A stretch of DNA of 63,375 nt, counting the filler, from Neoconidiobolus thromboides FSU 785 (Eukaryota > Fungi > Entomophthoromycota): NCBI GenBank assembly GCA_025603075.1. It is 4 parts of 4 records of this genome, joined end to end, with 100 filler letters (N's around TTAATTAATTAA, not from the genome) between each part and the next. Parts side by side here need not be neighbours in the genome. Positions count along the whole stretch, not along the records: positions 1 to 17,356 come from MU626580.1; 3 more parts are not named here. One strand, written 5' to 3'. The notes under the pieces were generated by a model that saw only the letters and a program-made list of their open reading frames with translations, was not told the DNA's origin and searched no databases. Below are positions 1-17,356 of this stretch, piece by piece; positions within the stretch are counted from its first letter, which is position 1; each line of letters begins with the position of its first letter. The translations under genes and the position numbers were made by a program.

Positions 1-410
1 GTATAAAAGAAATTGATGAAAGAATAGGGTGGAACTTATTTTGTAATACTTTAAATTTAAAATTAGATTTTCACTATTTGAAAACAAAAAGTACATTAGA
101 ATTATATTTTATATCAATATGTAAGGATTTGATTGCTGTAACAATTTTAAATGTTGTTGATCATTCTATTGATCCCTTTATTAATAATAATATTAAATTA
201 GTTGATAGAAAAATAGTTGAAATAGGTTTTAGTGATGATTGCTGTTTTGAATTTACCCCACAATTATTTAGGTTTAAAAACAAGGTTTTCCCAATTATTA
301 TATATCATCCACATTCGTATCTTGTTACTGACCCCATTGGAATAAACTTAAATAGTTATTTAGTATCATCATTGTCCCATATATGCTAATAAATAATAAA
401 TGACATTATA
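1..410 (+). repeat. Left arm of the contig-terminal inverted repeat
   Basis: Reverse complement of ~16948-17356. One substitution seen in the first ~360 bp, then divergence over the last ~50 bp. Confidence 0.95.
3..389 (+). CDS. 3' part of an unknown repeated gene, open from the contig edge (IKEIDERIGWNLFCNT...LSHIC*)
   Basis: The frame is open from base 3 to the stop at 387-389. A near-identical inverted copy lies at the other end of the contig. No family recognised. Confidence 0.45.
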   Translation: MKEIDERIGWNLFCNTLNLKLDFHYLKTKSTLELYFISICKDLIAVTILNVVDHSIDPFINNNIKLVDRKIVEIGFSDDCCFEFTPQLFRFKNKVFPIIIYHPHSYLVTDPIGINLNSYLVSSLSHIC

Positions 411-848
411 TTTCTTAAATTTTTACAAATTAAAATGATTTAACCTTTATTTTTAATATGGATGATAATATATATTAATAAAAATCAAACAAGTTAAAAA
501 GTATTTATGAGGAATTTTCTTAGGGATAAAAAAAGGGAAAATAAAAAATAAACTTCGTTATTCACTAACTCTTTTATCCATTTGTTAGTTATAATGAATA
601 AAGGATAGTGCGGATTATCGAAATTTATATTAATGTATCTTTTTTAATAGTAAAAGCTTAACATTTTTATTTCAAATATTTAATAACCTTGACAAGAGCC
701 GGGTCCGAAGATTTTTAACTTTAACATGCCGGTCTATATAAATATTAATAAAGCACTTTATAAAATGGCTCTTGTTTCCATATTCACCAATATGAATTCT
801 TTCGACTTTCTAACCTCTTTGTCATAATAACGATTTTCAAGTGATACT

Positions 849-955
849 ATATGGGGATGTATTTTTTGGCTTCATTATTTTTTCCATCCTTTAAGCGCTA
901 TTTGAGTGGAAAAATTATTAGTAAAGCTCTTAAACACAAAAATACATCCCCATAT
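849..955 (+). mobile_element. MITE (GGGGATG family), near-consensus copy
   Basis: ATAT-GGGGATGTATTTTT...AAAAATACATCCCC-ATAT; 99-bp body with core AAGCGCTATTTGAGTGGAAAA. Confidence 0.9.
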
Positions 956-1954
956 AGTCACTTAGATCTAGATTTGTTTTATATCACAATGGCAATCTAA
1001 GGGCTGTTAGTTTATTATTAGTGTTAATGGTAACTCCTTTACTGTTTCCCAATAGCACTTGAGGCTGAACCTGAGATCAAAGAAAGGGACAAAACAACTG
1101 CTATAAAATAAAATTTACAGTTTATAATATTGAATAAACTAAACTACAAAAATTTGTATTTAAAATGAATCTAAATTATAATTAGCCTCAAATTACTAAC
1201 TTATAATATGATTTTTTTAAAATAGTTTTTATTTCCCTACTAAGTTTATTTATTTTGAAAGCATTTAATGATTAGTTATTTAGCTATTTAGCTATAAGCT
1301 ATAAACTGCCTAAACATTAAATATTTATTTATAATATGCTTATGTATTAGTTGTTTACTCCTTTAGCCATTTAGCCATTTATTAGCTTTTAACTCTCAGT
1401 TGTGCAAGATGATACTGGGTATGATAGCCTTTTGTAGCTGCCAAATATTATTTAAACTATATTTACCATGAAAGTAAATGAACTATCGATTTAACATATT
1501 AATGGATAATTTATATCACAAAATAAACTGTACATTTCACTCAAAGTAATTTGAAATTTAAGAGTCAGTTTGCAACCCTTTAATTTTTCTGCCTTTAATA
1601 TCATTCCTTATACGTAATAGTTTTATAATAATACATATTGGTAACTGAGTAATTGAATGACCTATCATTATTTTCTACTTATATCATAATAAAGTAAGGT
1701 CATAATGCTGTTATACTAAAAAAATTTGAACCTTTGATGAGCAATCAAATTTTTGACATGAAATGGAAATTATTAATAAATAAATCAAAGCAAAAAATCT
1801 TTTCCCTAACCTTAATATCAGCACTAAAACCCATACTAAATCATAACTCTTAAGTATAGTTTGCTATAGTGTTTTGACTTAAACTACTATAAATTATTTT
1901 TAGCTTTGTAAAAAATACTCAATAATTTAACGTAAAGTGTCATATAAGGGAATG

Positions 1955-2035
1955 GGTTATTATTGTGGCTAAGAGTGCTTAACCATCACATGCCCTTACT
2001 AAAAGCCGAGGATTTGATTCCTCAAGTAGGCCTCG
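1955..2035 (+). pseudogene. Possible degenerate tRNA-like relic
   Basis: A-box-like GTGGCTAAGAGTG and T-arm-like CGAGG-ATTTGATT-CCTCA; no credible anticodon arm. Confidence 0.25.
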
Positions 2036-2485
2036 TTCTAAAAATATAAAAAACACGACTTTGTATTTGCTCATGTAATTTGTGAAAACTGACATGAGTT
2101 TCATCAATGTACTATTTTGATACCACTTTCAACTTTATACAGTTTATTACGAAAAAAACTGCCACGTAATTTAAACACCCAAGTACTATTTTGTCAAATT
2201 TTGAAATAAATTTTGATAAAATATTGTTTTATAAGATGTTTATTTGATGATATTCATAATTGCTATCACAACCTGATTATAGTTTCATTTTTTAAAAATT
2301 CTGAGAAATGCAGGTTATTTGATAAAGTTTTAAAAAAAAATCAATATTAAAGCTAGTATTTCCATTTACTTCGAAAGAAATATAGCCAATAGAAAATGAA
2401 AGAATAGTAATAATTTGCTATTTTTAATTTAATTCCAAATAGATAAAATGTCCACATGATAAAAAAATTGAACTTTTTTAATTTG

Positions 2486-2545
2486 AACATCACTTTTTAT
2501 TTGTTGTATTAATAAATAAACATCACTTTTTATTTGTTGTATCTG
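2486..2545. repeat. Short tandem duplication (CATCACTTTTTATTTGTTGTAT x2)
   Basis: Two direct copies ~33 bp apart. Confidence 0.8.
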
Positions 2546-4957
2546 TTTCTTGGTTTATTTATTTCTTTGGCCTATTTATTTATACATATATAACTATATA
2601 TACTATAGTTTATTATACTTTTATTTGCTTATAGTTATTTTTATCAAATCATCTCATTAGTACAAAAATATTTTTAAAATTGTGATTGTGAAGTCATCAT
2701 AGAACACTAATAAAAAGTTGCTATTCATCTAATATGGTAGCTAAATATCAGCGATATATGTATGTCGAAATTTAGAAAATTTTACTATTGGATTGTAGAT
2801 TTGAAAATGAAACAAATAGGTAATTCTTTCATTTAACTTTCTCTCAAAACTTTATAATAATTTTAAAAACTTGTAATTAAATTTAATTGTAAATTTTGAT
2901 TGTGAGAGTATAAATTATGAGTTACTAGAAATTCAGGGATAAAATGATTTTCAAGCCTATTTTTTGAGTTTTCACTTTGGTTTATCAAAGATTTTTCTAT
3001 ATACGGCAAACTGCGTTCAGCTTTATACTGAACCCAAACATAGTAATGTTAAATGATAATTTGAATGGTTATCAAAATTAACTACATAATTTATTTAAAC
3101 ACCTTCAATGATAGTAAACTTCTAGTAGGTATACTCTAATAGCACGTGAATTAGGATATCAACTTAGAATAATAGTATGTAAAATATCGTTTATTAATTA
3201 GATAGTGGACATCATGTATATTTATTATAGTCAAACATAATCAGCACAATAAAACTTCCATTATTCAATTTATTTTCTGATTTGGTTATCACAATATAAA
3301 AATATATATATGAAATCAAAACAATCACTAAGTAAATAAGTTAAAATAGGGTTATGAGCTTTACAGTTTTACTTTTAAGTAAAAGAAATGTTAAGTATCT
3401 ATCTAAAATTTTAAACATTTATCTATTATATTTAGTGTGTATGATGTTTTATTTCGTGACTAGCACATGTATTTTTTAACTGATGCTTATCAAGTCTGGA
3501 CTCGATGCTTTTATAATACTTAGTATAATCAAATATAATAAATAGTTTTGTAATGATTTTACTCCTTTAAAACCTGTTTGTCAACGCCTGAATGAAGGCT
3601 GAAAAGTAAGCTTTATAAAAAAATTTAAATATAGAATGCAATACAAAATCAAAGAGTGTGATATAAAGGAGTGAAACCCAAATACAAAGTAAACAGCATT
3701 ATATTCCTTTAAATAAAAAATGGACTTTAATGACTGATATAATGACCGATACGATGATATTGAAAAGTAGTCCACTATTATGTAGAAAAAACAATTCAAC
3801 TGTCTGATTTATCATGTTATTACCAAGGTTAAAAATATTTAAATATTTAAACAGGTTTGAATTTTAGAACAAATTGAAAAAAAAGTTATTTGTTTTGTAT
3901 TATATTTGGATATTAGAGCTATTTTCTATGTATGATATAGTTGAAACATGTTTTTTATTGTTAAACAATGAATAAAACTGGTTGATTAATTTCCTTCTTT
4001 TAAAACTGAAAAACTTGTTATAAGCTTTGATTAAGATAATTAACTAAACAGTCACATAGAATGAGTCTAGTACTTTTCCGCATGCTATTATTAAATATTT
4101 TTTAATAATCATCATCCTACAACATTTATTATATGTAGTTATATCAACTAAATATATATATACCTAGCAATTGCTTTTATCAATAAAAAGCTAGCCTTCT
4201 AATATTTAAGCTTGAATAATAACGATGGTACTTAAATATTTCGATATATTTTAATTTTTATGTTATAGCTCCATTTTAGTTGTAGCCGTGCTTTATACAA
4301 TTAAGGAATTTTAACCAATATATATATAAACCTGTTTACATTTATATCACTGTATTTGATTTTATTGAAATAGGATATAAAGAAAAAAGATAAGCTTATA
4401 AAGAATAACTTTCATGAACTGTTATTCCCAGTACTATTTTGGTAGATGTCCTATTAATAAAACGATAGCAACAGTTTTAGATAATCACAATAGGGTAGTT
4501 GGATGGTACTTTATATTTAAAATTTTCTGCCTATTATAAGCCTAAATAATTATGGTGTCTTATTTTATTTTATTTATTCAATAAATTTTAAAATGTACGC
4601 AAATTGGGAAGACTCAAATTATGAATTTTCAATAGCTTTATGGGTATTTCATTATGCATATTAAGATAATAGATACTTCTATCTTGGGATCTAAATGATA
4701 TATATATAAGTTAATAATAGTGGTTTAGTTATGAAATTTTATGTTAGTTTATATGTAAAAGCTAAATAAATAAGGCCATTCAATTAGTTAACAAACATTA
4801 AGTTTATTTAAAAATATACCAGTATAGATAAAAAAATGACAAGCCTCATGCTTATGCTTATAAAATCCTCATAAAGATCTAAAGTTTGAGGCATTATGAA
4901 AAAGATGAATTAGATGATTTCAATAGAGAGTAATCTTCTTGCTGAAGATTATATTAA

Positions 4958-5548
4958 CTAAAATGGAGTAAGAGTAAAGTTTGAAAAAGATGGTTGGACC
5001 TTGATCGTTGGCTCAATTGGGTGAAAGTTATTAAAGCAGTTAATAGCAGTAGATGAAAACTTTATGTCTTTCACTGGGTAATGAGTACCTAATAAACCTA
5101 ATGATCTGAGCGGTGGTAGAAGCAAAGATCCAGTTTCATGGTTAGAGGCCCTTCTTTCTATAAACTTGGGGCTCCTAACAGTAGGTGTATGGGTAGATGA
5201 AGAGGCTTGAAACGCAGATGGCAGCGTTAGATTGAAAGTATTCCTTCTTATTCTGTTTTTTTTTCCGCTTCTTTTTGGCACGTATTTGTATCCTGGATAC
5301 AGAGATGAATGGATGACCTTTTCCTGTTCTGCTTTTTGCTTGTAAAGCTCTTTGACATCGTCTGGCTCATTCTTCCACATATCTCCTATTATTACGCTAA
5401 TATTCTGATTGTTTTCACCTGGCATAGTCATTTGGAGCTCTTGCTGTTTTTCCCTTCTGTAGACGAAGAAGCAGTTCATAGGACGTGGTACTTTTCCTTG
5501 AACGCTATTCTGATGTGCACTACCGTTTGTATCTTCTTGTAGTTCCAT
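4958..5548 (-). CDS. Single-exon MATA_HMG-type (sequence-specific) HMG-box transcription factor, 196 aa; SexM/SexP/Ste11-like
   Basis: Motif KVPRPMNCFFVYRREKQ...NQNISVIIGDMWKNEPDDVKELYKQKAEQEKVIHSSLYPGYKYVPKR followed by a basic tail. First ATG at 5548; the ORF track starts at an upstream TTG. Confidence 0.9.
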   Translation of the reverse strand: MELQEDTNGSAHQNSVQGKVPRPMNCFFVYRREKQQELQMTMPGENNQNISVIIGDMWKNEPDDVKELYKQKAEQEKVIHSSLYPGYKYVPKRSGKKNRIRRNTFNLTLPSAFQASSSTHTPTVRSPKFIERRASNHETGSLLLPPLRSLGLLGTHYPVKDIKFSSTAINCFNNFHPIEPTIKVQPSFSNFTLTPF

Positions 5549-7189
5549 GAGAGCGGCCAAAATTACAATAGTTTAAAGTTTCAATATTTGAATTTTACTT
5601 TAAGATGTAAATTTCAAAAGCGGTGCATTCCGCTCTTTAAATAGTTGTAGTTTGTCCAGTTCGAATGTCTCCTAATTAGGAAGCTAATAAATTATCCTTA
5701 AGAAATTTTATTTAAAAGCCACCTGATGCTAGTATCAAATCTTAACTTTATTTGCAAATTCTACCAAACTCTAAATTAAAAAGTTATTAACCTACTTCAA
5801 GCGTAGATCCAAACATTTGTATATGATATTAGAGCTTTAAGTTATACGAGCGATACTAATTCTTTATTAAACAAGATAACTAGAACTTTTTTGTATTAAA
5901 TTTAAATGGAAAAGTTAATAATAGAGAATAAAAGCATTTATTTGAAAGTATACAACCTGTTTAGTTTTTGGAATTTTTTATGAATATTATATTCTTTTCC
6001 AAATTACCCCATATATAATTTAGCTTTCATATATCTTAATTAAGTGCCACTTTGTTTCGTGACTCACATACTCATAATGCTTTATTTTTAGAACTTAACT
6101 AAAACTTTCTTTTTTCTTTTATTTACGTTATAAATGTCATTCAATCTTTTAAAATAGATAATATAAAGTAAGATTGCTAAATAATACGTAATGAAGATAC
6201 TTGAAATGATTTATGTTTATTAACTTTAAAATATTATAAGAACCAAATCGTAAGACGGTGAAAATAAGAATAGTGAATTATTCCAAAATAGAAGTATAAT
6301 TACATTTTATATTACAATAGCCTATCCACTTACAATTAAGTATTGTAATAAAATACTATAAATAGGAATTTATTTGGTAAACATTTTTATATTGGAATTC
6401 ATTTAAAGACCATTTTAAAATGGGTGATGGATTTTATCAGAGCACTGGATAATAGTTTGTACTTTATATAATTTATAGCGAATAAGATATTCAAAAATTG
6501 ATACTATATACCCATATTACCGCTTCTTCCTATAGCTTTTACTTTATATTACTAATGCGGTGCCTTTTTTTGTTTGTTTTGAATGCTCATCTTCATTTAA
6601 CTCACCTTTTTATTGACTAATAATTATAAATTACTTATCAATTATAAAGATTTAAGTAGCTAATTCTTCAAAAAGAAGTGGCGGATACCTATTTAGTAAA
6701 TTTTACAACACCATAATTTCTCAGGATAAACTATAAAGGAACATACTAATGTTTTTCCACTTATCTATTAATACTTAAATTTATATTTATGCTAAATTTA
6801 TTGTGATTATCTTATATTTATTTTGTGAAGATTTAATAAGTTAAAGTCCAACCTATATAATAAACTTGTCGATTTGATTATATGACAGTTCATAGTTTTG
6901 AATTTTAGACAAGTTAAAAATTATGTATATTTAAATATTAAATTACGTGCTATTAATATTTTATACCAATATAACTCTTTAGAGAAGGAACATTTATAGC
7001 ATTGTCTAAAATTTGGTTGTTTATTTATTACTATCAGCTGTCTTAGATAAATAATCATTTATGTTATTTTTTGATATAGCTCAAATACCAATTTTCTTTA
7101 ACTGCAAATCTTCAATATTATCCACCAAACGATATAGCAGTCTATTAAATGAAAACACTACTAATCAATCCTTTAATTATAGTATAGTA

Positions 7190-7295
7190 ATATGAGGATA
7201 TTTTTTTGGTTTCATTACTTTTTCCATTCTTTTGAGTGCTATTTGAGCGGAAAATTTATTAGCAAAATTCCTAAATAAAAAACATATCTCCATTT
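7190..7295 (+). mobile_element. MITE copy
   Basis: ATAT-GAGGATATTTTT...CATATCTCC-ATTT with conserved core. Confidence 0.85.
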
Positions 7296-8053
7296 AACAA
7301 CTGATGCTCAATAAAATCAAAGCTATTAAGGTTAAGATGAAAACTAATAAAAGTATGATAATTTACAATGTTAGTAATTTATTCAATGCAATTTTATGAA
7401 TATTGTCCAAATACAATGTTACTTTTTTAAATTTAATTCTAAAATGCTATTGAACGCTATTGACAGCACAAGTAAAAATCTTCACTAAGCTTTTATGAAC
7501 AGTTGTGTTAAAATAGCATCAAGGTATCCTTACTTTTTTAGTAAAAAGTTTTATAAACAAAGATTCAGCGAGTTATTATTTTCAAATAAAGTAAATACAA
7601 AAGTACAAGAAATAAAATACAATGACTATTTGAAAATTAAGAAATACATTCTAACTTAATAAAGGTTTTTGTCTCCTATTTGAAGTTTTTGAAAATTAAT
7701 TCAATTAAGTAATTTTTGGAATTTTCAAAATATTTAATATCTCACTTATTATAAAACCTTGGGGCTGGGCCCATTTACCTACTTGTCCAAAATCCAGTTA
7801 TTTAAAAAAATAGATAAATAAATACAAAATACATTGATTTTATTGTACCATACACCTAAGGTTTGGAATAGGGACCTTTCTTTGGTTTCTGATGACATCG
7901 ATGACTTTAATTATCAAACCAGGCGGAGCTTTGTATCATGAAGAAATGTCAATGTGACACTAGCTTCTCAAAGGAGCTTATAACGAATAGCGATATTATC
8001 TAGCCATGGATTAATGGATCGCAATGGGAGATAGATAACTAAATTAAGGAAAC

Positions 8054-8135
8054 AGATGGACTTTTTTTCTAACTTCCCTTTTCAGATATTTTAAGTGCTA
8101 GTAAAATTTTTGAACACAAAATACATTTCCCTATA
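8054..8135 (+). mobile_element. MITE copy, internally deleted/degenerate
   Basis: TTAAGTGCTAGTAAAATTTTTGAACACAAAATACATTTCCC matches the right half of the family. Confidence 0.55.
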
Positions 8136-10457
8136 ATATAGGCCTTTAGTATAAATAATTAGAATTTTAATGTAAAATAAAAAACAAAATGATAGAAGAG
8201 AGCATCTTTAAGCATTTACTAGAAACATCAATCCTTACCGTTCTTGTAACAATCCTCTTTATATTCATATCTACACTTAAAGAAGTAAGAGCTTTGAGGT
8301 GCTCAGGAAGAACATTTCTACTCGATTAAAAAAAAACAAAGCAAGTAGATAAACCTTTCTTTATTTCATTCCTTACTTTAAACCATCACTACAAATTTTA
8401 TGTAACTTGTCAAGATACTAAAAGGCTATATAATCGTATAAATATTTTAAAACAATAACTCAATCTAAAAGCATCGTAACTTGTATAGGAGAGAAATTTG
8501 AAAATCGTATAGCGTGTACTTGCTCCTTTAATTAAATTTAAATGAACATGAGTGTTTTAGAACAGTATGTATATTCTGAAACGTTCATTTAATTCAGAGT
8601 AAAATATTGTTATACAAGGCTAACATTAAAATGAACTTATTAATAAATTTTACAATTTAGATAAATCAAGAGCACCTCAATTATAATTCGTCTAAACAAA
8701 TTTGTTCATTTTTATATTATATTTCTATTATACATCTATTTTATTTATTTATTCAAGCTCTATTTAAATGAAAACATGAAAACAGACAAAATTTACCAAA
8801 TAAGAATAAATATAAATAAGTAGATTTAAATAGAAATATAGATAAATTAGTCAGTATCTGTCTGATCTTTCAAAGTTATTCTTTTTAAGAAAGCTATTAG
8901 GGTGTTTTAAGAATCCTTATTGCATTAAATAAAGTTTTTTATAGCTGTCGCAGTTCTTTTTCAGCTTACTTGACTACATATTTAAGGGAAAAAAGTCAAG
9001 TTGAAATTCTATTAAAAAATGAGGGTCAGTCTTAAAGAAATGGCTATTAAGTACCTAATTGTAAAAATTATCGCTAAAAAAAAAGTCTCAAGAAAGTTGC
9101 AAGAACTATAAAGCATGTTAAGTCATGTTCCATGAATAAATTCGAGTATAAATCCATTTAGGTTAGATTTTTATAGTTCGATAAAAAAGGCAACATAAGA
9201 TAAAGCATTTAGTATTAAAAGTTCTAAATATGTAATAAATTAAAAATAATCCATTTGTTTTTATGGGGTGTTTAAAACCGTATTGTGATTATAAAAATAA
9301 AAGCTTATATTATGAACAAAAGTAATTATAATCATCAATTTTTTCTGTACTACTACGGAAATTTTGTATGCTATGAGTTATTTTACTTGGCATTGACTTT
9401 ACTGAATAAAGTTCAATGTACTCATCCTTCATTGTTGACTTTTCTACTCATATTATTTTAAAAGTAAAAATTAAAAACATTTTAAAAAGATGAAAAGGTG
9501 GCTAACTGATAAAGAATAGTGAAGGTAGACTATTGTTGTACTTATAACATTTGTCTTGTTACTTTTTTCTTTACCCTATTTGCTAATAGACCACTTAAGA
9601 ATTAATTGTTTTTTCAAGAATATACAAACAAGATATAAAAGGCAAAACAAAAAATATAATGGTTGCTTATGATTAATAAAAACTTTATTTTTTAATCATT
9701 CGCTTATTTATTACTACTTTTTTTGTGTAAATTCATTTTTAATTAGAATTAGTATTATCGCTAAAAATAGTAGATTTCTACAGTTTTCAACTTTACTCAT
9801 GAAAGTGATATTGAATTAGAATAAGTAAAGTACTAATCAGTTAAGTATAGTAAAACCCTTGTTAAAATATAATATTTGTTAAAAAGAGATGATAGCTAAG
9901 GGCTTTAGCTCTTGGTTTTTGTATTCTATAATTTTGATCAAAAAGCAATTATAAGTTTTAAGATATTATGGTCCTTAAAACTTATTAAATCCAGCCTTGT
10001 TTCAAGTAACAGTTTTTTCACAATTCATGAAGGTGTGATTAGTAATTTGTACAAACGTAATAAAGAAAGTTTACATCGACTTACTATATAGAAGTTAGAA
10101 AACTTCCTCCTACATAATTTATTCTCAATCTTATAAAGATTTCATCAATTAAAATTTAATGATTAGGCGAATTGCTATATCTTTATGAATATTTCTTTAC
10201 ATATTATATATAAGTGAATAAAGATTACCTTGTTCTTTATATTATTTATCATATTCTAGACAAAGTATATTTTGTGGCATTCTATTTCTATATATTCACA
10301 TAAATTTTTGTATTTATATTGAAAGTTTGATATTTTCCCGCCTTTAATATAATATCCGAAGCTTACAATGTTTATGATATTTATATATGTTAAGAATTAT
10401 AAAGTACAAAAAATATTTACTATAGATCACAAGCATTTATGAAGATCTATTAAGTAG

Positions 10458-10564
10458 ACATGAGTATGTTTTTTTTTGATTTCATCACTTTTTCCGTTTT
10501 TAAGCGCTATTTGAACAGAAAGGTTGTTAGTGAAATTCTTAAGTAAAAAAACACATCTCCATAT
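10458..10564 (+). mobile_element. MITE copy
   Basis: GAGTATGTTTTT...TAAGCGCTATTTGAAC...CATCTCC-ATAT. Confidence 0.85.
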
Positions 10565-10789
10565 CCATACAAAAACAAACACAAAACTCAGCGAGAATAA
10601 TCCGGGTTACCCTTAACTTTTAATCTGGTTTACTAAAAACTAAAGTTGATCCCATTGGAAGTTGGCTAGATTAGTATGCTCTTTTTAAAAAAGGCTATGT
10701 ATATTACATGATCAACACTAGTAACAAAATTACTTATATTCCTATTCAAATTGTCATATATGATTTAATTGATAATAGCGTTGAAAAGC

Positions 10790-10900
10790 ATCATATTTAC
10801 ATAGTATAGGTTTGAAGACGTGAGTCACTATGGACACATAATCATTTGCTTAATTGTTGACGATTTTTTGATAGCTGCTAGTAATTGGGCAAATGGTTAG
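10790..10900 (+). mobile_element. Possible Ty1/copia reverse-transcriptase relic
   Basis: Translation HIIICLIVDDFLIAASN resembles the copia RT YVDD motif context; flanked by stops, and no other RT motifs were found. Confidence 0.25.
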
Positions 10901-11229
10901 TGCACTCATGGTGGCTCATATCCAAATCTATGTTGGATGCCCTTAATTCGCAGTTAATAACAATGTTTGGTTAAATCGATCTCAATTACAAAAATTATTA
11001 TTAAGACATATATAAAATAACCATGAAAATTATATATCTATTCATTTATTGAATATTCTAAAACTAAACTTTGAACAGTTTTTATTAGTATAGATAGATT
11101 ATTAAAAATGTTTGTTTATTACAGTATGACTACTGTAAATTAACATAGGATCAATATAAAATTCGCAAGTTTGAAGTTTTTAGCAAGAAATTAGTCAGCT
11201 TTAGGGTACATCTAGGTACCCCTTTTTAC

Positions 11230-11325
11230 ATATGGGACTGTTTTTTTAGTTTCATTATTTTTTCATTTTTTAAGCGCTATTTGAGTAGAAAGATTGTAGT
11301 AAAATTAAAAAAAACATTCACATAT
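11230..11325 (+). mobile_element. MITE copy
   Basis: ATAT-GGGACTG...TAAGCGCTATTTGAGTAG...CATTCAC-ATAT. Confidence 0.85.
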
Positions 11326-11426
11326 GTCAATAATTTTTGATGCTTTATAATATTTCTAAAACTATACTCTTTTGTAGTTCTGTCATAACATAGTTCACTG
11401 TTTGTTTGAAATAAAATTAACCTGAA

Positions 11427-11532
11427 ATAAGGGGATGGATTTTTATGTTTAAGAATTTTACCAACAATTTTTCTACTCAAATAGTGCTCAAAAGATGGAA
11501 AAAGTAATGAAGCCAAAAAAACATCCCCGTAA
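11427..11532 (-). mobile_element. MITE copy
   Basis: ATAA-GGGGATGG...CATCCCC-GTAA; core in reverse orientation. Confidence 0.85.
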
Positions 11533-11745
11533 GGTTAAAATCAGACTAAGTTTAAAGATTAAGCTTTAAAAAATCAGATGAGCAAATAAGTGACTAATAT
11601 CACTGCATCCCAGATCGCAATAAAGCTGCAATAACTGTATGTGTGAGTTCAGAACTAGGTTAAAATTCGAAATAATTTTCCTCAGTTTTGAATTAACTCT
11701 AAACTTATAAAAACAATGTTAAATGAAAAATAAAAAAGATAAAGC

Positions 11746-11852
11746 ATATGGGGATATATTTTTGTGTTTAAGAATTTTACTAACAACTTTTCCGCTTAAA
11801 TAGCGCTTAAAAATGGAAAAAATAATGAAGTCAAAAAAAACACTCCCATATA
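11746..11852 (-). mobile_element. MITE copy
   Basis: ATAT-GGGGATATATTTTT...CACTCCC-ATAT. Confidence 0.9.
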
Positions 11853-12012
11853 TTTGTTTATTGTTTCTCTTTGTTTTTTTAAATTTTAAAGTATATAAAG
11901 TCATTCAATTTATCAATAGAAACAAAAATCCCCTTTATTTTCTTAGTATTCATGTTTACTTTGGAGTAAATTTCAACCGGAAAAAGGTTGAACCTTGGAC
12001 TTAAATTTAGCC

Positions 12013-12112
12013 ATATGGAGGATATATTTTTAGTCAATAGTTTCTAACTTTTCTGCTCAAACAGTCCTTAAAAAATAGAGAAAGTAATGAAACCAAAAAA
12101 ACATCTCTATGT
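12013..12112 (-). mobile_element. MITE copy
   Basis: ATAT-GGAGGAT...CATCTCT-ATGT. Confidence 0.75.
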
Positions 12113-12505
12113 ATAAAAATACTATTTAGATACTTTAAGATTTTTTATTAGTTTTTATGTTTATATGCTTATATTTCTTTTGGTAACAACTAGTTAAAAA
12201 TCACCATAAAAAGCATTTGGGATATAAATTTTATATGTACTTTTGATATTTTTGTTACTTTTAGAATTATTTCGAAAAAGCATATAAATATTATTTATTA
12301 TTTAAGATACTATAGTCTAAATCTATTTTCCGTATTATCGATTCAATAACATTGTTAGATATTCAGTATGATTAAAAAAATTTAGTGTAATACTACTATA
12401 TTACTAAAGCTCATTAATAACTCTATTAAATCTATATAAAGTATTTTAAAAACTTTTTTTAGAAAATGCATGTCTAGATTGGGGAAATATAAAATCAATA
12501 TTATT

Positions 12506-13457
12506 TTATTTGAAGTTACTAGATGAGTGACATTTGTTTTTGTATAACTTTAGCCTTCTTAGTTCTTTAGATTTACGTTTGTTATTGGTAGAACTTTCAT
12601 TCATAATCGGTATGTTCACTTTGACCGACAACAAAGGTGGTACAAGGGCATCCCATGATTTTTGATGAGTTTCAATGATATCATTATCCAATTTTAAAAT
12701 TTGTTTCTCAGTGCTCACTATAGTTCTATGATAATCTTCTAATTCCTTTTCTAGTTCTTTATTATGTAATCTTATGCTTTCATATTTTAATATCATGGAT
12801 TTATAATAATCTTCATAATCTTTAGTTATATCGTCTTCCTATTAAAACGAAAATTATTGTTGATATATTAAGCTAATTATCAAAATTACATGCTTTTCAA
12901 TTATTTCAACCACTTGTTTATTTCTATAAACTTGGAATAATAATCTTATTACAACTACTAATACTTTAATTTCCAAAAATAAATGCAAAGATTGAATAGT
13001 ATCAATGATGCTCATAACAATGTTCATCAATAGAAAACTAGAATCTAATACTGCTAATTGAATGGTATATAACTTAACATTTGTCAAAGTAACTAACTTT
13101 ATAGCTAATTCTATTATAAATAATAATATAAAGGGAACGCCTAATATATCAAACACTAAATGGAGAATCGACCTTTCATTAAATTTAATGCTCTTATTTT
13201 TGACTAAAGTGGACCCTACATTAATACTTTTAGTACTATTAGTGGAATAAAATTGAATTGAATTTACTATATGCAAATTCAAAACTTATAACAATAAGAT
13301 AAAATATGGAAGTCAACATTGTTTTGTAATGAAATGAACAGGAATCCACAATTTTAAAAGCTTTGTATTGGTATTTTTGGTATCGTGTTATGTTCTCATC
13401 ATGATTTAAATTTACTCGATTTAATATTATTTTATTTTCCAAGGTGCCAATATTCAT
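12506..13457 (-). CDS. Unknown multi-exon protein: hydrophobic membrane segments then a C-terminal coiled coil
   Basis: The ORF 12854-13282 frame joins in phase to the 12506-12838 exon through a GT-AG intron at 12889-12839 (...EIIEKH|EDDITKDYEDYYKSMILKYES...). The 5' exon structure is uncertain. Confidence 0.5.
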
Positions 13458-15795
13458 TTTATAAAAAAGTCAGAGGGGATCAATTTAGTCCTTATATAAT
13501 AATTGAAATCTATTAGTAGCTGTAGTAAATTTATTAAATCGATACTGTTATAGTAATTAAGGCTGTGAAAAGCTCTTAATAAAATAAAGGAAATTAAATA
13601 CTCTATTGAGTTTAAATTCACTGTTATTCCAATAATTTTTATTTTATATACCACTTTTTAAACAATTTATGAATAATGTTGCTTAGCCACTTTAACTATA
13701 AAAAGTCAAAATTTAACGTAAAATTTGCCAACATTTGAATAGAGTAATTTATGTGTTTAAAGCCCGTTTTTAATTGAACAGTATTTTTAACAACTTTAAA
13801 AGTGTATGAGTTAAATGTTAATATTTAATAAAACCTCAATTAAAGTTTTAATTTGAGGAAATTTATTATCATTTTTCTCCTTTCCATTATTTTAAAAAAT
13901 CCTTATTAACTGCATCAAGTTTCGGTTCTATAAATCCTATTCTAACAATCTGAACCACAACTTAAATATTAGTTACTGACAAAATTAGTTTATCTTTATC
14001 CAAGCTCTATTTTAAAGATGAATGTTTTAAAATGCTTATCATATACTTGAAGTTAATAATTTGATCTCTGTCTATTTATGCTTTTAAATTTTTTATTTAT
14101 AATACACCAATGCTTTTGAATATGGTTTGCTATCTTCGCTCTTTAAAACAAATCTATGTTATAAATAAATGAATTACTTTTTTCTATATGGATATTGGCT
14201 TTATTTAAATACTAGCTAACTTAGTTTATTTTTTAGGACTTTGGAATACATTTCAGTTTAATAGTTAAGCTTTTAGGGATAAAACATTTATATGGTTTTT
14301 CAAATTTTAAAAGTGCCCATTACATTCAATTTGATTTATATCAAGTTTTAAAAATCATACTGAACATAGAAAAGTATGAAGTTAACATATGTTTTAGTTC
14401 TTGAACTGTCATTAAAAACAATCAACCAAGTAATTATACTATCCGTTTTTTTAATATTATAAAATAATAATTTTTAAGCTTAAAGAAGTTAACGATTCAA
14501 AAGAATGTATAAATCAAGGGATATATACTTATTTTTAAAATCTAGATTCTTTTTAACGGAAATTAAAAAATCAAGCTTTAAGTTTGAAGAGATAAAAAAT
14601 CTCAAGCTCCTTTATTTCAAGTCCTTATCAAAAAAGGAAACTATAGTTTTCAAAAATTGATTCAAATTTAAGCAAAAAAAAAAAGCATTTTAACAAAAGT
14701 AAAAGAAATGAACATTTTAATATAAATTTGCCTTGATTTTTTACTTTTAATAATGATATTAGATAAAGATGAAATAAAAACGTTATTTAATGACTATTAA
14801 TAAAATAAGCTAAAGCGCTAGCTTTGTGTTAAATGTTTTTTAAAACGATTTTTTATAATTAAATAAAGAGTTAGCATTTTATTATTGTTATAAACCAAAT
14901 TTAACATATTAGTTGAATTAAAAAACCCAGAATGGAGCTAGATCCAGAAGGTTATAATGTTTTATTTCAAAGCTGCTTTTATGGAGAGGATGTAGTGGTT
15001 GGGTATTATTTAACATTTAAAAGGTTGCGCTGATGCTTGCATGGTAAAAAGTTAAAATTGAAAAATATTAACCTGTGTGATTTCTAAAACTACTAATCAT
15101 TTAAAATAAAATAGAATTTTTTTGTTGACAAAACTATTAATATTTTGTCTTGAAATAATATTGTATTAACACTATATTTTATTAATTTCAATTATTCTTT
15201 ATTTGACTATTAAAAGTAATATATATATATAAAGTAGCGTTTTTTTAAGCTGTGAAATACCGCTTTATCAACTCCGTTCCAAAGAATATTACCCTTTCTT
15301 TTTCATATCCATACTTGTCGGAGTATGAAAGAGATTTTAGAACATAGTAACTCAAGGCTTTTTAACTGAATTATTCTTTGATATCTCGTACATTTAATAA
15401 ACCCACTAAGTTTTATCAATAGTATTTTATATAGATTTTACAGTATTATTGTCTATTATATTTGTCTTAGTCTACAGTCTATTGCATGCTATTCTTTATA
15501 ATCTAAGTCTATCTTAGCTATATTAAATCAAGACCTTTCAACTTGCAACTATTCAATCAAGCAATAGCTGCTTTTGACTCTAACCACTGAGTACCAGATT
15601 TCACACTTATTGGTTTTTATTTTCTATTTCTTTTAAAGCACTAACTTTATGCATTGCTCAATTAATTTTATTATCATTATAATAAACTTTAATAATTTTT
15701 TATTTATTTATTTGTTTTATTGTAAAATTTTATGAACCCTGGGCTACTATAAATAGTTATTAAAATTAATGTAAATGAATTACGGTGTTTACATA

Positions 15796-15901
15796 ATATG
15801 GAGATGTATTTTTTGTTTGAGGATTTTACTAACAACCTTTCTGCTCAAATAGCACCTAAAAAATGGAAAAAATAATGAAATCAAAAAAATCATCCCTATA
15901 T
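15796..15901 (-). mobile_element. MITE copy
   Basis: ATAT-GGAGATGTATTTTT...CATCCCT-ATAT. Confidence 0.9.
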
Positions 15902-16352
15902 GCTTTCTATTGCTATATTGAAGTTCTTAAAAATTCTATTTTAAGACTTAATTATAAAAAACAAAATGAAACAACTATATATCTATTAAAAATTTAATAA
16001 AGCTATTTTAAAAATTTAATAAAAATGATATAAAGTACACAATTGAAAAAGTCAACTATTCAAAAAAATTAAAACTTTGATTAATTTTAAGTAAATTTTT
16101 AAACTAGTTTAGATATTTATATACATATAAAATAATAAATCTAAATAAAAAAACTTTTTTTCAACTAAACTTTCATTAGTATATAAATTAATACTAAAAC
16201 AAATATTAAATATAGCAATAAAATCATAACTGATAAATGTTCTCAAAATAAAAAATACTCGCATATTATTTATAAATAATTAATATTTAAAAAATTTTGT
16301 GCTCTGTATTTTTAAGAATTTAATTAAAATTAAACACTAGTTGAAAATAATT

Positions 16353-16458
16353 ATATGGAGATGTGTTTTTGTATTTAAGGATTTTGCTAATGATTTTTCC
16401 GCTCAAGTAGTGCCTAAAAAATGGAAAAGTAATCAAATCAAAAGAAACATCCCCATAT
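16353..16458 (-). mobile_element. MITE copy
   Basis: ATAT-GGAGATGTG...CATCCCC-ATAT. Confidence 0.9.
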
Positions 16459-16472
16459 ATATAAACCAATGT

Positions 16473-16574
16473 AACAGGGATGTATTTTTCTTAGGATTTT
16501 TATTGATAATCTTTCTGCTCAAACAATGTTTAAAAAATGGAAAAAGTGATGAAACCAAAAAAGTACCCACGTGT
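16473..16574 (-). mobile_element. MITE copy, adjacent to the previous one
   Basis: GGGATGTATTTTTC...ATGGAAAAAGTGATGAAACCAAAAAAG. Confidence 0.75.
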
Positions 16575-16853
16575 GCTAATTATTTTTTTATCAAATTAAT
16601 TATAATAAGGAAAAGTATTATTATATAAAATATAAAATTTTTATTATAACTTTATATCATTTAAAGAATAAAATTTAGTTATTGTTAGTTATTAATTATT
16701 TTTTAATTTTTACGTTTGATTTACTCTATCATTAAATTTACTTTTTATCAATCCTTTTGAGTATTTTTGTGTTTTTATTACTATATTTTTTAGCATATTT
16801 TTTACTAAAATTAGAATAATTAATTAATCTATTTATTACAATTCAAAGATAAA

Positions 16854-16944
16854 ATCTGGTAATTTTTTGGTTTCATTACTTTTTCCACTTTTTAAGCGGA
16901 AGGATTGTTAGTAAGATTCTTAAATAAAAAATACATGCCCATTT
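16854..16944 (+). mobile_element. MITE copy with internal deletion, abutting the right inverted-repeat arm
   Basis: TTTCATTACTTTTTCCACTTTTTAAGCGGAAGG...AAATACATGCCC. Confidence 0.8.
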
Positions 16945-16947
16945 ATT

Positions 16948-17356
16948 TTAATGCTATTTATTATTTGTTAGCATACATCAGACAATGGTAGTACTAAATA
17001 ACTATTTAAGTTTATTCCAATGGGGTCAGTAACAAGATACGAATGTGGATGATATATAATAATTGGGAAAACCTTGTTTTTAAACCTAAATAATTGTGGG
17101 GTAAATTCAAAACAGCAATCATCACTAAAACCTATTTCAACTATTTTTCTATCAACTAATTTAATATTAGTATTAATAAAGGGATCAATAGAATGATCAA
17201 CAACATTTAAAATTGTTACAGCAATCAAATCCTTACATATTGATATAAAATATAATTCTAATGTACTTTTTGTTTTCAAATAGTGAAAATCTAATTTTAA
17301 ATTTAAAGTATTACAAAATAAGTTCCACCCTATTCTTTCATCAATTTCTTTTATAC
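16948..17356 (-). repeat. Right arm of the contig-terminal inverted repeat
   Basis: Reverse complement of 1-410. Confidence 0.95.
16968..17354 (-). CDS. Second copy of the 3' part of the unknown repeated gene, open to the contig edge
   Basis: Same peptide as 3-389 except N>T (FINTNIK) and a different end (LVLPLSDVC). Confidence 0.45.
   Translation of the reverse strand: MKEIDERIGWNLFCNTLNLKLDFHYLKTKSTLELYFISICKDLIAVTILNVVDHSIDPFINTNIKLVDRKIVEIGFSDDCCFEFTPQLFRFKNKVFPIIIYHPHSYLVTDPIGINLNSYLVLPLSDVC

What the first reader, a model, noticed from the sequence alone, without database searches (positions are those of the whole stretch)
4958..5548. Candidate mating-type (sex) HMG gene isolated in a gene-poor, repeat-bounded contig
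Seen: an intronless 196-aa protein with one MATA-type HMG box is nearly the only gene in 17.3 kb that carries about 12 MITE copies. Known: Mucorales sexP/sexM, ascomycete MAT1-2-1 and Ste11 are single MATA_HMG-box regulators, and MAT regions often accumulate repeats. Inference: this may be a sex-determining or master mating regulator in a lineage whose MAT locus I do not know to be defined. The Mucorales flanking genes (triose-phosphate transporter, RNA helicase) are not present here.
Basis: partly seen in the sequence, partly recalled or inferred. Interest (0 to 1): 0.78.

Follow-up and report, generated by a model that had tools for sequence, protein, structure and literature searches.

The report
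Lone HMG-box regulator gene in Neoconidiobolus
This is an intact gene for a small DNA-bending transcription factor of the fungal mating-type HMG class in the zygospore-forming fungus Neoconidiobolus thromboides; nothing here shows that it is the sex-determining gene rather than an ordinary member of a multi-copy family.

Summary
Window 4958-5548 (minus strand) is an intronless 196-codon ORF with one HMG box (Pfam 3.6e-19). The model is confident over the box, which folds like SRY/SOX; the tail is disordered.

The window is scaffold MU626580.1 of GCA_025603075.1, Neoconidiobolus thromboides FSU 785 (Entomophthorales). The deposited annotation calls only the 80-aa box.

The box belongs to the fungal MATA_HMG type. 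It scores 80-91 bits and is 45-55% identical to fungal boxes, against 39-47 bits to SRY/SOX. An exhaustive search of 1.8 billion representatives found no ortholog and nothing matching the tail.

Evidence on a sex-locus role is thin:
- The Mucoralean flanks (TPT, RNA helicase) are absent from the 17 kb.
- The box tree places the gene in no supported clade.
- AU tests reject neither a SexM grouping (p 0.60) nor other placements, so phylogeny has no power.
- Related fungi carry several such boxes per genome.
- The species forms zygospores in single-isolate culture.
- Strain and expression data could not be obtained.

The scaffold is repeat-rich: 11 MITE copies and ends inside copies of a dispersed gene family. 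The same MITE also occurs on a gene-dense scaffold.

Verdict: a new member of a known kind. It is a weak, untested mating-type candidate in a phylum whose mating genetics are undefined.

The parts
4958..5548 (-). Complete intronless coding sequence of the HMG-box protein (196 aa plus TAA stop at 4958-4960; ATG at 5546-5548)
   Evidence: ORF listing; Pfam HMG_box 3.6e-19; GC 0.39 and GC3 0.36
5285..5488 (-). HMG box (residues 21-88), three helices at residues 26-41, 47-60 and 63-83
   Evidence: Pfam; AlphaFold2 pLDDT 93-98 over residues 21-90; Foldseek best matches SOX11, SRY and SOX2, TM 0.92, rmsd 1.1 A; gapless 80-residue alignment to human SRY
5261..5500 (-). The only part called in the deposited annotation (80-aa partial product, P0161)
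4961..5260 (-). C-terminal tail (residues 97-196), predicted disordered, no relatives found
   Evidence: pLDDT 54-71 and no secondary structure; all 150 listed hits of the exhaustive search are centred on the box; no tail similarity to the C. coronatus, SexM or P0121 proteins
1..481 (+). Scaffold end inside a copy of a dispersed gene family (open frame 3-386); positions 1-408 are the inverted repeat of the other end
   Evidence: 98% complementary arms; 88% identity to protein K502DRAFT_351974 of N. thromboides; 76% DNA identity to L002 6455-6933
16944..17356 (-). Other scaffold end, a second inverted copy of the same family fragment
12506..13457 (-). Neighbouring annotated gene: 3 exons, 282 aa, membrane segments plus coiled coil; not a TPT and not a helicase
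   Evidence: called gene; introns 13267-13216 and 12889-12839 reproduce the 282-aa length; Pfam blank; nearest Atlas clusters are short Ion_trans proteins, score 0.88
849..955 (-). MITE copy (about 108 nt, terminal inverted repeat ATATGGGGATGTATTTTT...)
   Evidence: nhmmer E 6.6e-30; alignment of copies
7190..7294 (-). MITE copy, the nearest one upstream of the HMG gene (1.6 kb from the ATG)
   Evidence: nhmmer E 1.2e-24
10458..10564 (-). MITE copy
   Evidence: nhmmer E 1.9e-26
11230..12112 (.). Cluster of four MITE copies (11230-11317 minus; 11428-11531, 11746-11851 and 12013-12112 plus)
   Evidence: nhmmer E 5e-14 to 2.5e-28
15796..16943 (.). Four more MITE copies (15796-15901, 16353-16458 and 16474-16574 plus; 16861-16943 minus)
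   Evidence: nhmmer E 4e-15 to 3e-27

Best explanation
The locus is an intact, single-exon gene of Neoconidiobolus thromboides. It encodes a small sequence-specific HMG-box transcription factor of the fungal MATA_HMG class.

Inferred mechanism. The N-terminal three-helix box binds the DNA minor groove and bends it, as SRY, SOX and MAT1-2-1 boxes do. The disordered 100-residue tail would recruit partner proteins. By analogy with characterised fungal HMG-box factors, the most likely process is regulation of sexual (zygospore) or other developmental genes. It would act as one member of a small family of such factors, not as a demonstrated idiomorphic sex determinant.

What is shown: the gene, its fold, its class and its genomic setting.
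What is inferred: DNA binding and bending, and the link to sexual development.

The repeat-rich, gene-poor setting is best read as an ordinary fragment of a repeat-laden assembly.
For: Gene and fold.
- Pfam HMG_box 3.6e-19.
- AF2 model with pLDDT 93-98 over the box. Best structural matches are DNA-bound SOX11, SRY and SOX2 (TM 0.92, rmsd 1.1 A), ahead of HMGB boxes.
- Gapless alignment to human SRY keeps RPMN-F, IS, G-W, H and YP-YKY-P-R.

Class.
- The best hits among 1.84 billion representatives are fungal single-box proteins at 80-91 bits and 45-51% identity. They include proteins named ste11-like, mat-Mc, MAT-2 and SexM.
- SRY and SOX score 39-47 bits.
- The consensus of 49 boxes has the IPRPxNxF...ISKIIGxMW...YPxYKYxP pattern, and the query carries every invariant residue.

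Intactness.
- 196 codons stay open in 24% GC DNA.
- Both the box and the tail are GC-enriched.

Origin.
- The scaffold is MU626580.1 of GCA_025603075.1.
- The same assembly holds K502DRAFT_351974 [Neoconidiobolus thromboides FSU 785].

Family context.
- Several MATA-type boxes per genome in Mucorales.
- Tandem HMG pairs in Basidiobolus.
- In Podospora, 11 of 12 HMG-box genes act in the sexual cycle, but only three are mating-type genes (PMC3730723).
Against: - No expression, binding or genetic data exist for this gene.
- The deposited model is only a box-sized partial. This may mean there was no transcript support, but that is an inference.
- The HMG paralogs of this genome could not be counted, so 'one of a family' rests on relatives.
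- The ORF's GC3 (0.36) is well above nine coding segments from seven other genes of the genome (0.15-0.27). This is unexplained.
- A constrained tree joining the gene to the SexM clade has a slightly higher likelihood than the free tree. A closer tie to sex-locus genes is therefore not excluded.
Confidence: 0.6

Rival explanations
1. It is the sex-determining (SexP/SexM-equivalent) gene of Entomophthorales. In this reading its locus has lost, or never had, the TPT and RNA-helicase flanks and has accumulated repeats because recombination is suppressed.
For: - MATA-type box in a short protein with the box about 20 residues from the N-terminus. This matches Syzygites SexM (187 aa) and the TPT-linked metagenomic protein P0062 (208 aa).
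- No ortholog above ~55% identity even within the box, and a tail with no relatives, as expected for fast-evolving sex genes.
- The AU test does not reject query plus SexM clade (p 0.60), and the constrained tree is 4.5 lnL units better than the free tree.
- Gene-poor setting: MITE density is 2.3 times that of a gene-dense scaffold.
- The nearest C. coronatus gene also lies next to an assembly gap, 0.8 kb from a scaffold end.
- Published trees fail to unite even true sex genes (PMC2866331), so a weak tree is not evidence against.
Against: - No TPT or helicase within 4.9 kb on one side and 11.8 kb on the other. None flanks the C. coronatus or Basidiobolus homologs either.
- The AU tests equally fail to reject a grouping with C. 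coronatus (p 0.49) or with a non-SexM Mucorales clade (p 0.195).
- In the free trees, SexM is no closer to the query than the median box: rank 145 of 283.
- The MITE is genome-wide.
- The species forms zygospores in single-isolate culture.
- The prior is low, because each genome has several such boxes.
Confidence: 0.12
2. It is a MATA-class HMG factor with a non-sexual role, for example a stress, hypoxia or stationary-phase repressor in the manner of Rox1 or PaHMG9.
For: - The MATA_HMG class includes non-mating regulators. PaHMG9 represses stationary-phase phenomena (PMC3730723).
- Nothing in the locus links the gene to sex.
Against: - Most characterised fungal HMG-box factors of this class affect the sexual cycle (11 of 12 in Podospora).
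- No orthology to any non-sexual member could be shown, because the tree is unresolved.
Confidence: 0.2
3. It is a recently arrived or dispensable copy that is not under selection in this genome: a retrocopy, a horizontally acquired gene or a repeat-associated duplicate.
For: - GC 0.39 and GC3 0.36 against 0.25-0.34 and 0.15-0.27 for other genes of the genome.
- Intronless.
- Embedded in repeat-rich DNA.
- Only a partial, box-sized model in the deposited annotation.
Against: - The ORF is fully open over 196 codons, with every invariant box residue intact.
- No possible donor exists: the best identity anywhere is ~55%, within the box only.
- No target-site duplication or terminal repeats flank the GC island.
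- The comparison set is small.
Confidence: 0.08

Closest known systems
Mucoralean SexM/SexP sex-locus HMG proteins (reference here: Syzygites megalocarpus SexM, AET35419.1 = P0107; TPT-linked metagenomic relative P0062)
   Same: - Short single-box protein (187-228 aa against 196 aa) with the box near the N-terminus and an unconserved tail.
- Box 40% identical to SexM over 80 residues with no gaps.
- A grouping with this clade is not rejected.
   Different: - No TPT or RNA-helicase neighbours.
- Not in the well-supported SexM clade (99/99) of the free tree.
- No idiomorph or expression evidence.
- Different phylum.
Conidiobolus coronatus KXN67256.1 ('mat-Mc' HMG protein, partial; full ORF L003 9929-10849)
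   Same: - It comes from the only other Entomophthorales genome identified among the hits whose origin was looked up.
- Intronless ORF with an N-terminal box.
- Box 51% identical to the query.
- Lies by an assembly gap near a scaffold end.
- No TPT or helicase nearby.
   Different: - The tail is longer (about 280-306 aa in total) and shares no similarity.
- 51% identity is no higher than to chytrid or Mucorales boxes, so orthology is unproven.
Ascomycete MAT1-2-1 / S. pombe Mc / Ste11 (MATA_HMG class)
   Same: - Same box class and signature.
- Proteins with these names are among the hits: Neofusicoccum 'mating type protein', Teratosphaeria MAT1-2, Trichoderma MATa1 and 'ste11-like' proteins.
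   Different: - The query lies outside the supported Pezizomycotina clade (95/95).
- Most of those names come from automatic annotation.
- Ste11-type proteins are much longer.
Animal SRY/SOX HMG boxes
   Same: - Same fold (TM 0.92, rmsd 1.1 A).
- Gapless 80-residue alignment that keeps the RPMN-F and YP-YKY-P-R motifs.
   Different: Only 30-35% identity and 39-47 bits, against 80-91 bits to fungal boxes.

Membership tests
HMG-box superfamily (Pfam PF00505) | Match to the family profile above the curated cut-off | tested here: met
   69.4 bits against a cut-off of 25.4, E 3.6e-19, profile positions 2-69 of 69
HMG-box superfamily (Pfam PF00505) | L-shaped three-helix fold | tested here: met
   Helices at 26-41, 47-60 and 63-83, pLDDT 93-98; TM 0.92 and rmsd 1.1 A to SOX11, SOX2 and SRY boxes
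MATA_HMG class (fungal sequence-specific boxes) | Closer to fungal MAT-type boxes than to SOX or HMGB boxes, and carries the class signature | tested here: met
   80-91 bits and 45-55% identity to fungal boxes against 39-47 bits to SRY/SOX and 20-27 bits to HMGB/TFAM; carries all invariant residues of the 49-box alignment. The curated CDD model cd01389 is not among the tools, and the trees had no SOX or HMGB outgroup.
Mucoralean-type sex locus (TPT - SexP/SexM - RNA helicase) | [quoted passage not shown] | tested here: not met
   No TPT by tblastn (best E 0.39). No ORF of 52 aa or more has a TPT or helicase domain. The limit is the scaffold: 4.9 kb on one side and 11.8 kb on the other.
Mucoralean-type sex locus (TPT - SexP/SexM - RNA helicase) | Box groups with SexM or SexP in a phylogeny | tested here: inconclusive
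   The free trees put the query in no supported clade and outside the SexM clade. The AU test does not reject the grouping (p 0.60), but it also fails to reject two other placements. No SexP reference was available.
Mucoralean-type sex locus (TPT - SexP/SexM - RNA helicase) | Idiomorphic: alternative, highly diverged alleles in (+) and (-) strains | not testable with these tools
The species forms zygospores in single-isolate culture.
Mucoralean-type sex locus (TPT - SexP/SexM - RNA helicase) | Induced during mating or zygospore formation | not testable with these tools
Ste11/Prf1-type upstream mating regulators | Orthology to Ste11/PaHMG5 | tested here: inconclusive
   Nearest rows by path include proteins named 'ste11-like' (Basidiobolus, Dimargaris), but without branch support. 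The query is 196 aa against 355-375 aa for those proteins.

The most novel reading that the evidence does not exclude
The gene is the first sex-determining HMG gene of the Zoopagomycota/Entomophthorales. It would be related to the Mucoralean SexM lineage but uncoupled from the TPT and helicase flanks, and would sit in a repeat-rich, compositionally distinct island. Its unusual GC3 would then mark a locus with a separate evolutionary regime.
Probability: 0.12. Interest if true: 0.7.

Novelty: new member of a known kind. Interest (0 to 1): 0.3.

Why it matters
Mating genetics is undefined for the whole phylum Zoopagomycota, which includes the insect-pathogenic Entomophthorales (PMC10386755). Any MATA-class HMG gene there is a legitimate candidate to test.

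This report adds four things:
- the organism;
- a corrected full-length gene model (196 aa instead of the 80-aa partial);
- the nearest relatives and their genomic contexts;
- a demonstration that box phylogeny cannot settle the question, so synteny, strain comparison and expression must.

On present evidence this is an ordinary family member, not a discovery of a MAT locus.

Tried and rejected
Searches that found nothing:
- Word-index protein search with the full protein.
- Exact look-up of the 196-aa product; only the 80-aa model is on record.
- Metagenome scan for relatives.
- Rfam and tRNA scans.

No expression or strain data could be obtained.

Attempts to find other HMG genes of the same genome:
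- I looked up short, box-only hits. P0106 comes from GCA_002104905.1 and P0127 from GCA_002705745.1, so neither is from N. thromboides.

Ideas rejected:
- An arbuscular-mycorrhizal origin, my first guess from the AT-richness and the known expansion of MATA-HMG genes in those fungi. Searches ruled it out.
- The 408-nt terminal inverted repeat as the ends of a giant transposon. The repeat is the 3' part of a dispersed gene family that is also found inside a gene-dense scaffold.
- Insertion signatures around the GC island; only AT-rich chance matches were found.

Checks with a limited result:
- P0077 as a second TPT-linked reference: tblastn found no TPT in its loci.
- The neighbouring spliced gene was searched exon by exon, by reference. 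The exons were joined only inside a script, to check that the introns give the annotated length of 282 aa. The joined product was not sent to any search or folding tool.

Full report
OBSERVATION

On the minus strand, an ORF runs from the ATG at 5548 to a TAA at 4958-4960, giving 196 aa. An in-frame stop lies just upstream at 5573-5575, so the frame cannot be extended without an intron. Pfam HMG_box matches residues 21-88 at E 3.6e-19. A six-frame profile scan shows this is the only HMG box in the window. The ORF is a GC island, 0.39 against 0.245 for the window. In 100-nt bins the island spans 5000-5700.

An AlphaFold2 model built with a 49-box alignment gives pLDDT 93-98 over residues 21-90. 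It has three helices (26-41, 47-60, 63-83). The tail is featureless at pLDDT 54-71. Foldseek's best PDB matches are DNA-bound SOX11, SRY and SOX2 boxes (TM 0.92, rmsd 1.1 A), ahead of the non-specific HMGB boxes.

ORIGIN

A profile search returned an 80-aa, box-only protein that is 100% identical to the query and sits on a 17,356-bp contig. Its record is NCBI GCA_025603075.1, scaffold MU626580.1.

The open frame at the scaffold end (3-386) is 88% identical to part of 'hypothetical protein K502DRAFT_351974 [Neoconidiobolus thromboides FSU 785]'. That protein is encoded on MU626446.1 of the same assembly. The organism is therefore Neoconidiobolus (formerly Conidiobolus) thromboides, order Entomophthorales.

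The deposited annotation calls only the 80-aa box as a partial product. The full ORF of 196 aa is a better model.

SURROUNDINGS

The annotation has one other gene on the scaffold: a 282-aa, three-exon gene at 12506-13457 on the minus strand. Introns at 13267-13216 and 12889-12839 reproduce the annotated length. It has membrane segments and a coiled coil but no Pfam match. It is neither a triose-phosphate transporter nor a helicase. No other ORF has a domain match.

A ~108-nt MITE with ~19-nt terminal inverted repeats occurs 11 times in the window. It also occurs 3 times in 11 kb of the gene-dense scaffold MU626446.1. It is absent from the C. coronatus and Basidiobolus loci. It is therefore a genome-wide element that is about 2.3 times denser here.

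The two scaffold ends are inverted copies (98% complementary over 408 nt) of the 3' part of the K502DRAFT_351974 gene family plus downstream DNA (76% identity). The scaffold simply stops inside a dispersed repeat on both sides. No repeats bracket the HMG gene itself.

RELATIVES

The word-index search, the exact look-up and a metagenome scan found nothing.

The exhaustive phmmer search of 1.84 billion representatives gave 6,220 hits. All 150 listed hits are centred on the box. The best single-box hits score 80-91 bits at 45-51% identity. Those whose origin was looked up come from early-diverging fungi of many lineages:
- Basidiobolus ('slightly ste11-like');
- Dimargaris;
- Gaertneriomyces ('MAT-2');
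- Smittium, Furculomyces and Zancudomyces ('Mc');
- Conidiobolus coronatus ('mat-Mc');
- Dichotomocladium, Jimgerdemannia, Diversispora, Entrophospora and Neocallimastix;
- Syzygites megalocarpus SexM.

SRY and SOX score only 39-47 bits. The 49-box consensus is the MATA_HMG signature, and the query has every invariant residue. The box is about equally distant (50-55% at most) from everything. The tail matches nothing.

The class assignment (MATA_HMG) is therefore sound. No ortholog can be named.

PHYLOGENY

A tree of 283 boxes (85 columns) puts the query in no supported clade. SH-aLRT values on its path are 66, 28 and 60. The nearest rows by path length are Basidiobolus, Neocallimastix and Dimargaris. 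SexM ranks 145th of 283.

A careful 62-box tree recovers four supported clades:
- a SexM clade (99/99: Syzygites SexM, P0077, P0062);
- a large Mucorales clade with up to three members per species (99/94);
- a Pezizomycotina MAT1-2-1-type clade (95/95);
- a Harpellales clade.

The query stays on the unresolved backbone.

AU tests reject none of the placements tried:
- query plus SexM clade: p 0.60, with the constrained tree 4.5 lnL units better than the free tree;
- query plus the C. coronatus pair: p 0.49;
- query plus the Mucorales clade: p 0.195, 15.6 lnL units worse.

SYNTENY

The defining feature of the zygomycete sex locus is TPT - HMG - RNA helicase (PMC2866331). That arrangement is seen here for the SexM-clade protein P0062, which lies next to TPT-domain genes on a metagenome contig.

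The window has no TPT (tblastn best E 0.39) and no helicase. Nor do the loci of the C. coronatus homolog (neighbours ThrE, a phosphoribosyltransferase and HSP20) or of the Basidiobolus homolog. The membership feature is not met, within the limits of a 17-kb scaffold.

BIOLOGY OF THE HOST

N. thromboides forms zygospores in cultures of single isolates (PMC7136305). [quoted passage not shown] Mating genetics of Zoopagomycota 'is still not well understood' (PMC10386755). No paper in the library links HMG genes to mating type in Entomophthoromycotina.

The lineage is indeed open territory, but a two-idiomorph system may not exist in this species.

INTERPRETATION

The gene most likely encodes a working MATA-class HMG transcription factor. 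It would bind and bend DNA through the box, and the disordered tail would act as an interaction region.

A role somewhere in sexual or developmental regulation is the best guess. In Podospora, 11 of 12 HMG-box genes act in the sexual cycle, yet only three are mating-type genes (PMC3730723). Being 'the' sex determinant is possible but has a low prior, and I put it at about 0.12.

For the sex-determinant reading:
- a SexM-like architecture;
- fast divergence;
- the repeat-rich setting;
- the non-rejected SexM grouping.

Against it:
- no synteny;
- multi-copy families in relatives;
- a genome-wide MITE;
- self-fertility of the species;
- no power in the tree.

UNEXPLAINED

The ORF has GC3 0.36 (box 0.42). 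Nine coding segments from seven other genes of this genome have GC3 0.15-0.27. The sample is small. Codon bias, biased gene conversion or a younger arrival are all possible.

LIMITS

- The HMG paralogs of this genome could not be counted.
- Only one named SexM and no SexP reference was available.
- The trees had no SOX or HMGB outgroup.
- The neighbouring spliced gene was searched exon by exon, by reference. Its joined product was not sent to any search tool.

Noticed in passing
window 12506-13457 (minus strand): The annotated three-exon, 282-aa gene has several membrane segments, an arginine-bearing segment and a C-terminal coiled coil. The nearest Atlas clusters to exon 2 are short Ion_trans proteins (score 0.88). 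That layout suggests a voltage-sensor-domain-only (Hv1-like) protein. Pfam and PDB sequence searches are blank.
   Followed up: partly
window 4958-5548 compared with L002 (MU626446.1) genes: The HMG ORF has GC 0.39 and GC3 0.36. Nine coding segments from seven other genes of the same genome have GC3 0.15-0.27. The GC island matches the ORF plus about 150 nt upstream. The cause is unknown and the sample is small.
   Followed up: partly
window 5261-5500 (minus strand): The deposited annotation of GCA_025603075.1 calls only an 80-aa partial product (the box). The open frame with ATG and stop codons is 196 aa.
   Followed up: yes
L004 4570-5697 and 6632-7357 (Basidiobolus ranarum JASJQH010000272.1): The query's nearest homolog by path length sits in a head-to-tail pair of HMG-box genes 935 bp apart, and their boxes are only 48% identical. 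Two linked, diverged HMG genes would be worth examining as a possible mating locus. A second record (L011, KZ303509.1) also has two HMG genes, 7.6 kb apart.
   Followed up: no
L003 9929-10849 (Conidiobolus coronatus KQ964648.1): The C. coronatus 'mat-Mc, partial' model (92 aa) is likewise a truncated call of an intronless ORF of about 280-306 aa. It lies directly after a run of N and about 0.8 kb from the scaffold end.
   Followed up: partly
window 1-481 and 16944-17356; L002 6001-6933: A dispersed, unannotated gene family (K502DRAFT_351974-like, no Pfam domain) forms both scaffold ends in inverted orientation. A 128-codon frame stays open in 24% GC DNA in both copies.
   Followed up: partly
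window, 11 sites (849-16943); L002 4429-4532, 4796-4894, 7120-7222: A ~108-nt MITE family with ATATGGGGATGT... terminal inverted repeats, apparently flanked by TA. It is common in N. thromboides and absent from the C. coronatus and Basidiobolus loci examined.
   Followed up: partly
L009 2789-5412 (JGI metagenome 3300076270): An uncultured relative of Syzygites SexM (P0062) lies beside TPT-domain genes and an alginate-lyase gene. This is a canonical Mucoralean sex-locus arrangement recovered from a metagenome. The related P0077 loci share the alginate-lyase neighbour but show no TPT by tblastn.
   Followed up: partly
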